Below the pieces are notes generated by a model. That model had not been told where the DNA came from and did not search any database. It saw only the letters and a program-made list of their open reading frames with translations. From the NCBI RefSeq assembly GCF_001194135.2, contig NC_068998.1:47712032-47775655 (forward strand): a DNA stretch of 63,624 bases, written 5' to 3'. This document shows positions 51,401 to 57,400 of the stretch, one piece after another. This stretch comes from Octopus bimaculoides (Eukaryota). Made by a program: the position numbers and the translations under genes. Positions within the stretch are counted from its first letter, which is position 1. Each line of letters begins with the position of its first letter.

Positions 51401-54400
51401 GTCCGACTTTGCCAGTCATCCTTTCGGGGGTCGATGTGATCGACTTAATCCCTTAGTCTGTCCTTGTTTGTCCCCCCTCTATGTTTAGCCTCCTGTGGGT
51501 AATAAAGAAATAAGAATAATCTGAATGCTGAAGGGTTAAACCAGCCAAAATATTCTGCCTCTTTTATGTTTGAACTGGCCAAATCCAACATCTCACACCT
51601 ACTCTACAATGCCATAGCAAAAACAAACAACCACATCATTGAAATCTTGAAGTCACAAGATAATACATAATTAATTCAAGACGATGTGAATAAATAAGGA
51701 TTACATTTGACACTAATCTGAACGCTGAAAGATTAAAGTTTATGCGGAATGTATAATTTCTCCATTCACCCAAAGATGAGAATGCCTGAAAGCCACAACT
51801 TCACAGCAGACTATTGAATTCAAGACTCACCTGATCCTCATACTGAATGCATTGATGTCCTTGTCCAGTTGATCTAACAGAGCAATACTCTGAATAATCA
51901 TGTTATCAACTCGGTTGATGTTAAACTTCACCTTGGCACGAGAATAGGCGTGGCCAAGTCCCAACTGGGCCTTGTTCTGGGTCACAGATGTCATCCCTTT
52001 CACTATATTGTGGAAGTGGACTCGGATACCTGGCAAATAAACGACAACAATATTGGTCTCAAATTTTGGCAGAAAGCTAGGAATTTCGGGGAAGGGTGAA
52101 AGTTGACTACAGTGACACCCAGTGGATCAACTGGGTCTTAATTTTTTTTATCAACCCTGAAAAAGGATTAAAGGCAAAGTCAACTTTGGTGGAATTTCAA
52201 CTTAGAACTTACAAAAGACAGGTTAAATGCAGTTGAGCATTCTGCCTGGCATACTAACGATTCTGCCATCTCAGTACACTTTAAATGACAATATTGACAG
52301 TAGAAACAGACAAAGAAAGTGTTTAGAGAAAGGATCACACTACCCTTGTTTCAACAGCTTAGTTTAGATGTTTGCAAGGACCAAACGAAATTCAACAAAG
52401 AAGATTTTCTACAGCTGGAAGTTATTCCTGCTGTCAACTCACACTTAACCATGTAGACTGTGATGTCTTTGAGAGTACCCTTGTACAGACTTCACACAAT
52501 GGTTGCAAATGTGCATCAATGTTTTACAAGCAAAGTGGTTTGTTTGTGGAAATATTACGTTGTTCAAAAACAGGGAGGGCCGATGATATTAAAGGGCATC
52601 CGATAGAAAATCTGAACCGAGAAATTCTGCACAACTCATGCAAGCATTGGGAAAAGTCGGTGTTAAGTGTTAATGACAACGATGAACACTTCAAGCAGGG
52701 GTCTTTATTGTGGTATAAAAAAAAGAAAAGAAAAGAAAAAGAAAAAAGAGAGAGAGAGAGAGCCTGAAACAAGCATCAAGATTTACATTTACACCATTTT
52801 ATGGGATAGGAACAAATGTAAGTTCTACTTAGACCAGTTTGCTCAATGGTCAGTTAACACCTGGGTGGAGAAGAACTGGTTTGGTGTAGGACACTAAAAT
52901 TAGCAACAATTACAGAACTGGTGCCATAGACATTCGGTGTCCAATATCTTTTACTTGTTTCAGTCATTAGACTGTAACCATGCAAGAGCAATACCTTGAA
53001 GAATTATTAAAGCCTGGGACCTTTTCTGAACTGCTAAGTTACGAGGACAAACACAGATACAAAGCCCCCACCCCCACCCCAGGGGCTCCTTTCAGTTTCC
53101 ATTTACCTAACCTGCTCACAAGGCTATGGTCAGCTTCAGGATATAGTAAAAGACACTTGCCCAGGGTACCATGCAGCGGGACTGAACCTGGAACCATTTG
53201 GTCGGGAGGCAAGCTTCTTACCAATAGAAGTACCAGCTGAGCATTCATAATCTTGTGGGCTTACAGGTGTTGGTGCCATATGAACACACCTGCGCTGGTG
53301 CTGTGTAAAAGCACTCAGTGCACTTTGTAAAGTGGTTGACATTAGGAAGGGCATCCAGCTGTAGAAACCACAGCAAAACAGATATGGAACCATCTAACCC
53401 ATGCCAGCATGGAACCACCACTGGTCCTCTTTGCACGGCACCAGCTTGGGGATCCAAGCAAGCTAAATTGCAAATTGGGGATCTCTGGTAGTATTTGAGA
53501 TCATAAAAACATTTTGATTTAGGTATATTTATCATTAAAAACAGGCTTCTTTCTCTAACGTTTTACACATTTCAGCATGCATTTGGCCTCTGAAACACGT
53601 TCTCTAAGAAAGCTCTATTGCAAACTTACACAAGTGAACGGGTGAAACACAAAATTGGGATTTGTATAAAACCGGTTTTTTTAAACATCAAATGGTGATA
53701 GGGGTCCACCAGAGTAAAACAGTAATCGAAGGGGTCCATAGGTAAAAAATGAATGAGACCCCCTGATGCAGATGGAAAAAAAAAAAAAAAAACTGAGAGA
53801 AAGAAGAAGCTTACCTCTGATTATTTCTGGAATGGCTCCAGTGTGGACACAAGAAATATTCAAACTGTTATCTTCAGAAATGGCAGCCCCTAACTTGGAA
53901 TCGCCGACCCCAAGAAGTGATGTAACCTTTTTCTTGGACATTGGAACATTGGTTTCGATGAAAACCCGAAGATTCTCATGAAGAATACCTGGTTAAAAAA
54001 AACAAAAAAAAAACATTAACATTTCTGACTCCATCCTTACCAGAGGTTGCTCCTGGTTTTAGGACACAAACTTGCAGTTTCAACCCTCTAGCTCTCACAC
54101 TACTCTGTCAAGCTTATTTATTTATATTGGTTTTAATTAATCATTCATTTCTCTCATAACTTCAAGATTTCAATGATGTGATGGTTAATTTTTAGGACAT
54201 GGTAGAGTAGGTGTGAGAAGTAGGATCTGGCCAGTTTCAACATATAAGACCACTTTTTTTATGACAGTTCCCTGTCATAAGTGACAATTACAACACATCA
54301 TACAAAAATTAGTCATTTCAGTTTTATGATATTCTTATAATGTACCCCCCACCACTTCACACCATTTATGACATCATGTTTAAGTTAAAAATCATCACAC

Positions 54401-57400
54401 ATTGCTAAAGTCCTAGCCACTATCTTCCAATGGTCCATTGTTAATGCACATTCTCTCAAATTGATGTCACAACCAGAAATAAAAACAGGATGTTTAGAGA
54501 AAGAGAGAGAGAAGGGGGGGGGAGAGATTATTGATGTAAATTCTACTTAGACCAGTTTGTATAACGGACACAACTGGGTGGAGAAGAATTAGTTTGGTGT
54601 AGGACACTAAAATCAGCAACAGTCACAGAACTGGTGCCATAGACATTCAGAGTCCAGCAGTAATGATAAATGGCACAGGATTACTGCAACTAAATCACAA
54701 CGAAACAGTTGTACACTAGAGTGACCTGAATCAGTCACACACTAGTATCATCTATGTTATGCCCCTTGTGGGAAATAAAGAAATAAGAATTTGACTTGTA
54801 TGCAGTAAAATATGCTAACTTTTTGTTGTCTTAATATAACATGAAATCCATCTTTTAACTAATACTGCAGCACAACTTACAACTACAACTAGTCTGGAGT
54901 GACACAGACGGGCATTAAAATATTGCATATAACTTTGGACAGTTTAGCACTCTTGTGCAAGCATGGCCGTGATAAGACAATTTGCCTTCTTGTCAAACCA
55001 CACAAACACATAAATCTTCAACCTATTTGTAATTAATTCTTCAATATTCACACGAATTTGAATTAATCATTGATTATCTCACAGCTTTGAGATTTTTTTA
55101 GAATGACATTGTAGAGTAGGATCCGACCTACTTGAAAACGAAGCAGAAAATATTTGGGTTGGATAAGGCTGGCTTAAACGCAAAGGGTTAAAGAATACAA
55201 AAATATTCACAACTAGCATCTCACTGCATCATTTTATCCAGGAGGTTTGTTAACACACTTCCACAATTATACACACTGGGGTCTATATATCTTTAGCGAA
55301 GACTCAAACAATATTCTCATATGCCTACAAGGTCAAGTCTATGTGGAGACAGACAGGTGGTGGTGGCCAGTAAAATAGAGCGAAATTATTGATGTAAATT
55401 CTACTTAGACCAGTTTGTGTAATGGACACGACTGGGTGGAGAAGAATTAGTTTGGTGTAGAACACTAAAATCAGCAACAGTCACAGAACTGGTGCCATAG
55501 ACATTTACTGTTCAATATCGATTTATGATTAGCAGCCTGGACATGGCACAGCATTAATGCCACTAACTCACACTGTTATGCTGTAACATTATTTTTACAT
55601 TCCAGTCGAGACAGTTGATAGCTCTTAACTCAAAGTTTTGCAACAGAAACAAAACTGGTTTTATAACAAAAACAGAAATTGGAAAAGATTTGAAAAGAAT
55701 CAATAATTTGTCAAGAAATGCAAAGGCCTAGTCTTCAGCAACATCATTACTATTGTTTCCCATGTTGGATAGTTTGACAAAATCTGACAAATTGGAAGAC
55801 TATTTTGAGTCCCCAGTGCTTGCTTTGGCAAAGATCCCACGGCTGTGAGAATGACATTTTGGGGTAAGTGTGAGAGCCCATATCTTGCTAGTCTGAACAT
55901 AAAACAGGCAGAATATTTCAGCCAAATATAACTGGTTTAAATACTAAAGGGCTAAAGTATCACATGACAGGGTAGCAAGATTGTAGGAACAGACCAAATG
56001 AAGGAGTAAAACAAAGACGCCAACAACTTCACAGTGTTCTGCAGTGATTCTCAACCATTTGTTGGCCTACAGACCTATTTCTCTGATTTTCACTTTACTC
56101 AGTGGGGCAAGATCCTCTTAGCCATTCCATGTTTGAAAATTCTTATGTTTTTATCATTAAATATTAGGAATTGTGAAGGCACATGGACCCAGTGACTAAA
56201 GTGTTGGGCTCAGCCATGACGTAGTGACATTTTGTTGGTAGTCAACCCATAATGATTTCTTAACTGAAAGGTCTGGCCTCATCAAGAACATTCAGTTATA
56301 GAAACCATGCCAAAATTGCCAGTAGAGCCTGGAGCAGTTCTCTGGCTTGCCAACTCCTGCCAGCATGAAAGACAGAAATTAAATGATGAAAATTACAAGA
56401 TCAAAAAAACAACAAACAAAAAGATAACTTACCTTCTGATATACTATTTATGTTGTCTAGGGCATTGGTGCCACTTTTGAAAGGAGAAAAAGCCACAAAC
56501 TTGACAATGGCGTTAAACTTGCCCAAATTATGCACAGCAGCTTCCACTTGTGGCAGTAGCATCGACATTTCTTCAAACTCTGCAACATGAAACAAGGTGT
56601 AGCCGCAGGCATGTTCATAGAGAACATGCAGTATCTCAGCCTAAAATTGAACACAAAACGAAGAGAATCAGTGAGAAGCAAGGCAAATGATTGCAGTAAA
56701 TGAATCTAATTTAGCAGAAAAGAACAAGAGATGATCATTTAATCCTTTACAATTCAGATTGCCCAGAGAAATAGGTTCAGGAATTTTGAACAATTCACAC
56801 ACTTCAATCTGGTTTCTTATAGCTTTCTGAAAATTTATATCTTTTAATAAAATTTTCTGCAAATATGTTCCAGATTTATCACATCGTAACTTGACGTGGA
56901 AGAAAATAAGGCAGAATTCTGGTTTAAGCATCCCATATAACCCTTCATAACATTTCTTTATTTTTTGGCATTTACAGAAAATTTCAGCGAATTTGTAGTG
57001 TACACGCGAGAATTCATACGATTATGGAAAAAAAAACAACAAAAAACACTCCACTATTTCTTTCAAATCAAATTCCAAAATAATCGTAATCTACACCATT
57101 TGAAAGGTATTTGCTGAAAATTCCACTAAAAATATTCATTTTTTCCAGAGCTATGAGGAAACAAAGTCGACGGGCACACATCTGTAGTTATGCCTGATGC
57201 TCTCACCAATCGTTAAGTTTCATTTATTCCTGACCCTACACGGTCCAGATGGACTATATATATGTAATCTGAACCTTTCCCCCCTTATTTCTTTTGTTTC
57301 TTTTTACGGAATCCCTCAATTTAAAAATTTCGACCCCCACCACCGGTTTTTATATAGATCCACAGGGTAAACCTAACCCTAACACTAGTTTTGTGAGATT

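What the first reader, a model, noticed from the sequence alone, without database searches (positions are those of the whole stretch)
52814..55505. Three paralogous H/ACA snoRNAs in NOP56 introns 2 and 3 with compensatory changes
Seen: a 116-121 nt unit occurs three times (52814-52934, 54532-54647, 55390-55505) while the flanks diverge faster. Copy A versus B/C shows a compensatory lower-stem swap (GUUCU/AGAAC versus AUUCU/AGAAU), an H-box change that keeps ANANNA (AAACCA versus AAACUA), a remodelled apical loop and invariant pocket strands. The pocket (CUCCAC / UCUAAG, 14 nt from ACA) fits 18S CUUAG-UU-GGUGGAG. Known: this is yeast psi1290 / human psi1347, guided by snR83 / SNORA4, the latter hosted elsewhere in vertebrates. 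Inference: a relocated, amplified guide, with a C/D core-protein gene hosting an H/ACA cluster.
Basis: partly seen in the sequence, partly recalled or inferred. Interest (0 to 1): 0.8.

Follow-up and report, generated by a model that had tools for sequence, protein, structure and literature searches.

The report
Three octopus H/ACA snoRNA copies in NOP56
Two introns of an octopus NOP56 gene carry three copies of an unannotated small nucleolar RNA that most likely directs one conserved pseudouridine in 18S ribosomal RNA, which is a solid but ordinary addition to a well-known RNA class.

Summary
A unit of about 125-130 nt occurs three times on the minus strand: A at 52814-52943 in NOP56 intron 3, and B at 54532-54656 and C at 55390-55514 in intron 2, all in the sense orientation. 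The units are 81-94% identical, while their 150-nt flanks sit at the random baseline.

Each copy has full box H/ACA architecture. This means hairpin, hinge with H box, hairpin, then ACA with a 3-nt tail, and 14 nt from each upper stem to its box. Two stem pairs changed in a fully compensatory way.

The invariant 3' pocket (UCUCCAC / UCUAAGU) pairs best with 18S ...CUUAGU-[UG]-GUGGAG.... That site ranked first in 16 of 16 rDNA loci and places the modified U at the equivalent of yeast psi1290.

- The H box is more likely the invariant ACACCA.
- No Rfam family matches, including SNORA4, snR83 and SNORA51, so "relocated SNORA4" is unproven.
- NOP56 hosting an H/ACA snoRNA is already known, since human and frog NOP56 host SNORA51.

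No equivalent guide exists in NOP56 of four other lophotrochozoans or a frog. Expression and the pseudouridine itself could not be tested.

Verdict: a new member of a known kind, of modest interest.

The parts
52814..52943 (-). H/ACA snoRNA copy A (130 nt) in NOP56 intron 3. H box ACACCA at 52882-52887. ACA at 52817-52819. 3' pocket strands UCUCCAC at 52865-52871 and UCUAAGU at 52827-52833. 5' pocket strands at 52926-52936 and 52895-52901.
   Evidence: (152.8 bits against model R1). A perfect 6-bp 5' terminal stem. Weak SCARNA24 match spanning exactly 52814-52943.
54532..54656 (-). H/ACA snoRNA copy B (125 nt) in NOP56 intron 2. H box at 54595-54600. ACA at 54535-54537. 3' pocket strands at 54578-54584 and 54545-54551.
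   Evidence: (fold z = -2.7).
55390..55514 (-). H/ACA snoRNA copy C (125 nt) in NOP56 intron 2, 858 nt upstream of B in the same intron. H box at 55453-55458. ACA at 55393-55395. 3' pocket strands at 55436-55442 and 55403-55409.
   Evidence: (fold z = -2.8). Carries the compensatory G-C to A-U change in the 5' terminal stem.
53815..53988 (-). NOP56 exon 3, which separates intron 2 (53989-56432, holding C and B) from intron 3 (52030-53814, holding A).
   Evidence: tblastn of Octopus vulgaris NOP56 and GT-AG junctions.
56433..56640 (-). NOP56 exon 2. It begins at the acceptor ...uuuuag|GCUGAG, so the start codon lies on an upstream exon.
51831..52029 (-). NOP56 exon 4 (…IRVHFHN…FSMRIR).

Best explanation
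The three units are paralogous genes for an intron-encoded box H/ACA small nucleolar RNA in an octopod genome.

Inferred biogenesis. They are transcribed as part of the NOP56 pre-mRNA. After splicing, exonucleases trim the intron down to a particle protected by dyskerin, NHP2, NOP10 and GAR1. The mature RNA is about 125-130 nt and ends 3 nt after ACA.

Inferred function. The 3' hairpin is the working guide. Its pocket strands pair with 18S rRNA on both sides of a uridine in the conserved helix-34 region: 5'-CUUAG(U)-[U G]-GUGGAG-3', with 5 bp upstream, a U-U mismatch, and 6 bp downstream. This places the uridine equivalent to yeast U1290 at the base of the upper stem, 14 nt from ACA, for isomerisation to pseudouridine. 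The 5' hairpin pocket has no conserved rRNA match. It is probably structural or an orphan guide.

Inferred history. Copy A split from the B/C lineage first. B and C arose by a tandem duplication of about 0.86 kb inside intron 2. Selection has since kept the RNA while the flanks randomised.

What is shown and what is inferred. Shown: the architecture, the boxes and spacings, the conservation pattern, the compensatory pairs, the best target site, the host gene, and the orientation. Inferred: expression, processing, snoRNP assembly, and the pseudouridine itself.
For: Architecture:
- Hairpin, hinge, hairpin, tail in all three copies. 95% of pair cells are canonical, against 20-45% when partners are slid by 1-3 columns.
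- ACACCA lies 14 nt after the 5' upper stem and ACA lies 14 nt after the 3' upper stem.
- Conservation ends just past the ACA box and its short tail.

Selection:
- Units are 81-94% identical while flanks are at the shuffled baseline.
- Variation is concentrated in the 3' apical loop (10 of 16 columns). The 3' pocket strands show 0 of 14 variable columns.
- There are two fully compensatory pairs and two G-U/G-C or U-A/U-G switches.

Target:
- The 18S site is the single best hit in 16 of 16 independent eukaryotic rDNA loci, scoring 10 against runner-ups of 7-9.
- The arm duplex energies are -8.7 and -3.7 kcal/mol.
- L064 is confirmed as SSU, 5.8S and LSU rRNA, and the target U is SSU position 1298 of 1808.
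- The target U is 10 nt 3' of the CCG cytidine listed as yeast ac4C1280. That makes it U1290, which the same table lists as psi1290 guided by snR83.

Context:
- The copies are intronic and in the sense orientation in NOP56. NOP56 is a known snoRNA host gene.
- There are no further copies in the window, and the unit is not part of the dispersed repeats that surround it.
Against: - No expression data and no pseudouridine mapping were available for any cephalopod.
- Guide-target complementarity alone is only modestly significant. About 6% of shuffled pockets reach the same score somewhere in about 6.9 kb of rDNA. The nucleotide 5' of the target faces a U-U mismatch.
- With three closely related sequences, covariation statistics are weak (64 of 500 shuffles). 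Gene conversion between copies could mimic purifying selection.
- Copies B and C each carry one mismatch in the 5' terminal stem, and copy A's minimum-energy fold is not better than shuffles (z = -0.6).
- No Rfam family reaches its threshold.
- No orthologue from a second cephalopod could be obtained.
The target site was taken from environmental eukaryotic rDNA, although the 25-mer around it is identical in more than 120 contigs.
Confidence: 0.75

Rival explanations
1. These are genuine, expressed H/ACA RNAs, but the 18S match is fortuitous. The real substrate is something else: a cephalopod-specific rRNA segment, an snRNA or an mRNA, guided by either pocket. Alternatively the RNA is an orphan.
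For: About 6% of shuffled pockets score as well somewhere in rDNA. There is a U-U mismatch next to the target U. The 5' pocket strands are also nearly invariant (3 of 18 columns vary, all at the pocket edges), yet they have no conserved rRNA target.
Against: The best site coincides exactly with a known, conserved pseudouridine position (yeast psi1290). It ranks first in 16 of 16 rDNA loci. Both 3' pocket strands are invariant across paralogues that differ by 16-19% elsewhere.
Confidence: 0.13
2. The units are non-functional relics, either snoRNA pseudogenes or a fragment of a mobile element duplicated with its surroundings. They look conserved only because of recent duplication or gene conversion.
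For: Dispersed repeats are abundant in these introns, and one abuts the 5' end of unit A. B and C each have a mismatch in the 5' terminal stem. Genome-wide copy number could not be checked.
Against: Flanks are fully randomised while units stay 81-94% identical. Substitutions avoid boxes and pocket strands and are compensatory in stems. All three copies are in the sense orientation inside one snoRNA host gene, and none lies elsewhere in the 63.6 kb.
Confidence: 0.08
3. The units are Cajal-body scaRNAs related to SCARNA24 that modify an snRNA.
For: SCARNA24 is the only H/ACA family Rfam aligns full-length to copies A and B (24.5 and 23 bits).
Against: The scores are far below the gathering score of 70. 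The matching letters are the terminal stem and the boxes, not the pockets. A CAB-like UGAG occurs only in copy A's variable 3' loop, and the 5' loop is CUGU in all three copies.
Confidence: 0.03

Closest known systems
Yeast snR83 (guide for 18S psi1290 and psi1415)
   Same: It is a box H/ACA guide whose target includes the same 18S uridine predicted here (yeast table in PMC5699541; site mapping).
   Different: No detectable sequence or structure similarity (Rfam). snR83 is not intronic in NOP56. The second octopus pocket has no match to any conserved rRNA site, so a second 18S target like snR83's psi1415 is not indicated.
Human SNORA4 (ACA4), hosted in EIF4A2
   Same: It is an intron-encoded H/ACA snoRNA that, from background knowledge of snoRNA databases, guides the homologous 18S site (psi1347). 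That assignment could not be verified in the library.
   Different: The host gene is different (EIF4A2). The SNORA4 covariance model gives no match even at E<=10. It is single-copy in human, against three copies here. Orthology is undemonstrated.
Vertebrate SNORA51, the H/ACA snoRNA hosted by NOP56
   Same: It is an H/ACA snoRNA in an intron of the same host gene (human; frog).
   Different: SNORA51 lies in intron 4, after ...FSMRVR, not in introns 2 or 3. Its listed target is different (28S-1849). The model gives no match to units A, B or C.
Drosophila-type intronic H/ACA gene clusters, with several paralogous guides in one intron
   Same: Two paralogous H/ACA copies share one intron (B and C, 858 nt apart), and a third sits in the neighbouring intron. 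This is amplification by local tandem duplication.
   Different: This comparison rests on background knowledge and was not tested here. The usual animal rule is one snoRNA per intron, so how two copies are released from one intron in an octopus is unknown.

Membership tests
Box H/ACA snoRNA (class) | Hairpin-hinge-hairpin-tail secondary structure | tested here: met
   Folds. Four helices with 95% canonical pair cells, against 20-45% for slid controls. Two compensatory pairs.
Box H/ACA snoRNA (class) | H box (ANANNA) in the single-stranded hinge | tested here: met
   An invariant ACACCA lies 1 nt after the 5' hairpin. A second candidate, AAACYA, overlaps it.
Box H/ACA snoRNA (class) | ACA box 3 nt from the mature 3' end | tested here: inconclusive
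   ACA is present in all copies, and conservation ends 1-3 nt after it. The mature 3' end itself needs RNA data.
Box H/ACA snoRNA (class) | 14-16 nt between the base of the upper stem (target U) and the H or ACA box | tested here: met
   The distance is 14 nt in both hairpins of all three copies.
Box H/ACA snoRNA (class) | Bipartite pocket complementarity flanking an rRNA or snRNA uridine | tested here: met
   The 3' pocket forms 5+6 bp around the 18S U equivalent to yeast 1290, the top site in 16 of 16 rDNA loci. About 6% of shuffled guides score as well. The 5' pocket has no conserved target.
Box H/ACA snoRNA (class) | Stable expression and association with dyskerin, NHP2, NOP10 and GAR1 | not testable with these tools
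   No cephalopod RNA data could be reached.
SNORA4 (Rfam) | Match to the family covariance model at its gathering score | tested here: not met
   No match at gathering, at E<=10 on 3.4 kb, or on 151 nt.
snR83 (Rfam / yeast) | Match to the family model, and the same target site | tested here: not met
   No model match. The predicted target coincides with psi1290, so this is a functional analogue, not a demonstrated member.
SNORA51 (NOP56-hosted H/ACA of vertebrates) | Model match and the same intron of NOP56 | tested here: not met
   No model match. Frog SNORA51 is in intron 4, whereas the units are in introns 2 and 3.
SCARNA24 / scaRNA | Model match at gathering score, and a CAB box (UGAG) in the terminal loops | tested here: not met
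   23-24.5 bits against a gathering score of 70. UGAG occurs only in copy A's variable loop.
Dispersed repeat / transposon fragment | Many copies outside the host gene, in either orientation | tested here: not met
   There are only three copies in 63.6 kb, all sense and intronic in NOP56. Neighbouring true repeats have 4-7 copies in the window. The genome-wide count is not testable here.

The most novel reading that the evidence does not exclude
In the octopod lineage NOP56 has been turned into a dedicated H/ACA host. It would carry three amplified copies of a de novo or retargeted guide for the 18S helix-34 pseudouridine, plus a fourth unrelated H/ACA candidate in the intron that holds SNORA51 in vertebrates, and it shows none of the C/D snoRNAs that vertebrate NOP56 carries. 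On this reading the conserved but unmatched 5' pocket directs a lineage-specific modification on a non-rRNA substrate.
Probability: 0.12. Interest if true: 0.5.

Novelty: new member of a known kind. Interest (0 to 1): 0.27.

Why it matters
Cephalopod snoRNAs are essentially unannotated, because homology-based pipelines such as Rfam miss them; nothing here reaches a gathering score. This locus gives three clear, structurally supported H/ACA genes with a specific and testable target. It also gives a covariance model that could seed annotation in other cephalopod genomes.

It illustrates how guide-host relationships turn over. The yeast 18S position psi1290 (guided by snR83) is predicted to be served here from NOP56, and, if the unverified SNORA4-psi1347 assignment holds, from EIF4A2 in human. 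The locus is also an example of two snoRNAs in one animal intron. None of this changes how H/ACA guides are understood to work.

Tried and rejected
- Rfam at gathering score on the whole window, and at E<=10 on 3.4 kb, 14.5 kb and a single unit. The only match was a sub-threshold SCARNA24 alignment. SNORA4, snR83 and SNORA51 never appeared.
- Covariance model R1 built from the three copies, searched with default filters and with filters off against NOP56 loci of Haliotis rubra, Lottia gigantea, Mytilus californianus and Lingula anatina. There were no credible hits; the best was 14.5 bits at E = 0.3.
- A strict guide-signature regex (CUCCAC...CUAAG...ACA) on those loci and on a frog locus found nothing. 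A looser regex gave only noise.
- Fetching the Octopus vulgaris orthologous locus failed because the protein is not on record. The same happened for Mya arenaria. P0003 turned out to be intronless.
- Searching the large protein collection with the spurious ORF that overlaps the unit, hoping to recover cephalopod contigs or transcripts, returned no candidates.
- Literature searches for psi1347/SNORA4 and for octopus snoRNAs found nothing usable. One query was malformed.
- Target search for the 5' pocket in two registers found no site recurring across rDNA loci. From memory, U6 snRNA nt 26-32 (UAAAAUU) complements its 3' strand, but the downstream arm does not pair, so I rejected it.
- The idea that the units are positional homologues of SNORA51 was rejected, because they are in different introns.
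- A simple de novo box C/D scan of the NOP56 introns gave no candidates, which is a weak negative.
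Full report
**What is there.** The repeat finder reports a three-copy direct repeat at 52811-52943, 54524-54656 and 55382-55514. blastn with each copy against the whole 63.6-kb window finds only these three. A covariance model built from them (R1) scores them at 153-165 bits, with nothing else above 12 bits.

Aligning the reverse complements shows that conservation starts at UGGAC/UGAAC and ends 1-3 nt after an ACA. 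This gives units of 130 nt (A, 52814-52943) and 125 nt (B, 54532-54656; C, 55390-55514).

**Host gene and organism.** ORF translations on the minus strand are NOP56 exons. A concatenated exon query hits NOP56 proteins throughout animals. The best is Octopus vulgaris at 95% identity, followed by an unnamed protein at 80% and then molluscs, nemerteans and brachiopods at about 70-74%. The window is therefore an octopod, but probably not O. vulgaris itself, given amino-acid differences in every exon.

tblastn and GT-AG inspection place exon 2 at 56433-56640, exon 3 at 53815-53988, exon 4 at 51831-52029, and the start of exon 5 at 50436. Exon 2 begins at an acceptor site, so an upstream exon carries the ATG.

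**Is the conservation more than chance or recency?** Inside the unit, B-C are 93.6% identical, A-B 83.8% and A-C 81.1%. The 150 nt on either side are 46-54% identical under global alignment, which is indistinguishable from shuffled sequence (mean about 51%). A sensitive self-comparison of intron 2 shows the B/C homology block extends about 50-60 nt upstream of the unit at about 58% identity, with an 858-nt offset. B and C therefore came from a DNA-level tandem duplication whose flanks have since decayed.

The introns are full of dispersed repeats with 4-7 copies in the window, and one abuts the 5' end of unit A. The unit itself is not part of any of them.

**Anatomy.** Each copy folds into two hairpins separated by a hinge and followed by a short tail (z = -2.7 and -2.8 for B and C, and -0.6 for A, whose enlarged apical loop lets alternative folds compete).

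With the structure written explicitly, 95% of pair cells are canonical, against 20-45% when 3' partners are slid by 1-3 columns. Two pairs changed on both sides:
- Columns 6-57 in the 5' lower stem are G-C in A and B and A-U in C. This one is new.

Two more pairs switch between G-U and G-C or between U-A and U-G. With three sequences this is suggestive, not statistically decisive (64 of 500 shuffles).

The hinge reads UACACCAAACYA. ACACCA is invariant, starts 1 nt after the 5' hairpin, and lies 14 nt from the 5' upper stem. ACA lies 14 nt after the 3' upper stem.

Variable columns are concentrated in the 3' apical loop (10 of 16, plus a 5-nt indel). The two 3' pocket strands (UCUCCAC, UCUAAGU) show 0 of 14 variable columns, and the 5' pocket strands show 3 of 18, all at the pocket edges.

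**Target.** To avoid relying on memory, I pulled eukaryotic rDNA from the metagenome collection using the proposed site as the pattern. More than 120 contigs carry the exact 25-mer. The surrounding 55 nt are nearly invariant. One locus (L064) was confirmed as complete SSU, 5.8S and LSU rRNA, with the site inside the SSU at position 1298 of 1808.

A canonical H/ACA scan treats the target U and its 3' neighbour as unpaired, pairs the upstream arm with the 3' pocket strand, and pairs the downstream arm with the 5' pocket strand. With the 3' pocket it puts the site 5'-CUUAG(U)-[UG]-GUGGAG-3' first in 16 of 16 full-length rDNA loci, scoring 10 against runner-ups of 7-9. The arm duplex energies are -8.7 and -3.7 kcal/mol.

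The selected uridine is the second U of AGUUGG. It lies 10 nt 3' of the CCG cytidine that the yeast table lists as ac4C1280, so it is U1290. The same table lists psi1290 as guided by snR83. That ac4C falls on the middle C of CCG is established knowledge, not something tested here.

There are three caveats:
- About 6% of shuffled pockets reach the same score somewhere in 6.9 kb.
- The nucleotide 5' of the target faces a U-U mismatch.

The coincidence of the top hit with a known conserved psi position is what raises confidence. The 5' pocket gave no site that recurred across loci in either register.

**Comparison with known families.** No Rfam family reaches its gathering score in the window apart from three tRNAs. 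At permissive thresholds the only H/ACA family that aligns full-length is SCARNA24, at 24.5 bits for A and 23 bits for B against a gathering score of 70. The matching letters are the terminal stem and boxes, not the pockets, and no CAB box is conserved.

SNORA4, snR83 and SNORA51 never appear, even when a single 151-nt unit is searched. The units are therefore functional analogues of snR83, and by background knowledge of SNORA4, but membership and orthology are not demonstrated. "Relocated" remains a hypothesis. SNORA4's human host, EIF4A2, is confirmed. Its target assignment could not be confirmed in the library.

**Is NOP56 hosting H/ACA RNAs unusual?** No. Human NOP56 hosts SNORA51 (H/ACA) and SNORD86. 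In a frog NOP56 locus, Rfam finds SNORA51 and SNORD57 above threshold.

Exon boundaries are conserved between frog and octopus. Frog SNORA51 sits in intron 4 (after ...FSMRVR), not in introns 2 or 3. The units are therefore not positional homologues of SNORA51.

NOP56 loci of Haliotis, Lottia, Mytilus and Lingula contain no relative of the unit, no guide with the same pocket signature, and no Rfam snoRNA at all. Among the species available, the arrangement is specific to the octopus lineage. Other cephalopods could not be reached.

**Side finding.** Octopus intron 4, the intron equivalent to the SNORA51 intron, contains a fourth, unrelated H/ACA-shaped element at 50816-50951 on the minus strand. 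It reads hairpin, ACAUAA, hairpin, ACA-UGC, with a fold z of -4.8. It gives a full-length but sub-threshold SNORA41 match of 31.5 bits against a gathering score of 80. It shows no convincing similarity to frog SNORA51, and its targets are unresolved.

**Verdict.** The interpretation as H/ACA snoRNA paralogues predicted to guide the conserved 18S pseudouridine equivalent to yeast psi1290 is well supported by sequence evidence. It lacks expression and modification data. The claims of relocation from the SNORA4 or snR83 lineage, and of an unusual host-cargo combination, are respectively unproven and already known. This is a new member of a known kind, useful for annotation and of modest general interest.

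Noticed in passing
window 50816-50951 (-), NOP56 intron 4: A fourth H/ACA-shaped element, unrelated to units A, B and C. It reads hairpin, ACAUAA, hairpin, ACA-UGC, with a fold of -42.5 kcal/mol (z = -4.8). It gives a full-length sub-threshold Rfam SNORA41 match (31.5 bits, gathering score 80). It lies in the intron that is positionally equivalent to the SNORA51 intron of frog NOP56, but shows no convincing similarity to frog SNORA51. Its targets are unresolved; recurrent weak 28S candidates are GGUGUAGAA[UA]AGUGGGAG and AACUUUAAA[UG]GGUAAGAAG.
   Followed up: partly
window 54532-55514, NOP56 intron 2: Two snoRNA copies (B and C) share a single intron, 858 nt apart. This breaks the usual one-snoRNA-per-intron pattern of animals. 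How both would be released, whether by endonucleolytic cleavage or by an unannotated alternative exon between them, is unknown.
   Followed up: no
window 57403-57608 (-): A roughly 206-nt element with about 40-nt near-perfect terminal inverted repeats (GCTGTTATTTCTAGCATGTAAATAGCCTGCTTGGTGG...CCACCAAGCAGGCTATTTACATGCTAGAAATAACAGC). It scores 50.8 bits against the plant MIR5512 model (gathering score 139). It looks like a MITE-type hairpin near the 5' end of NOP56 rather than a microRNA.
   Followed up: partly
window 61109-61181 (+), 61965-62038 (-), 63314-63389 (-): A small tRNA gene cluster beyond the 5' end of NOP56: two near-identical tRNA-Lys(CTT) genes on opposite strands and one tRNA-Asn(GTT).
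   Followed up: yes
window 51056-51700, 53069-53223, 54130-54250, 55034-55120, 55848-55918 and copies at about 4.5, 8.7, 15.8, 17.7, 42, 47.3, 48.5 and 49.2 kb: Several families of dispersed short repeats, SINE- or MITE-like and some with inverted-repeat arms, populate the NOP56 introns and the rest of the window. One copy starts 1-4 nt from the 5' end of snoRNA unit A.
   Followed up: partly
window 675-1367, 2061-2179, 6555-7259, 7825-8399, 17124-17541, 32614-32939, 34234-34497, 59548-60058 and three shorter runs: There are eleven runs of N (assembly gaps), so the window comes from a draft scaffold. None falls inside NOP56 introns 2-4.
   Followed up: yes
window 44600-58500 (NOP56 gene): No homologue of the vertebrate NOP56-hosted C/D snoRNAs (SNORD56, 57, 86, 110) was detected, either by Rfam at E<=1 or by a simple C/D-box scan. 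The octopus gene appears to carry only H/ACA-type candidates. This is a weak negative.
   Followed up: partly
L002 and L003 (public contigs JAAUYG010135333.1 and an ENA metagenome scaffold): A NOP56 homologue 74% identical to the octopus protein is encoded without introns (1578-nt continuous ORF) on short contigs of unknown organism.
   Followed up: no
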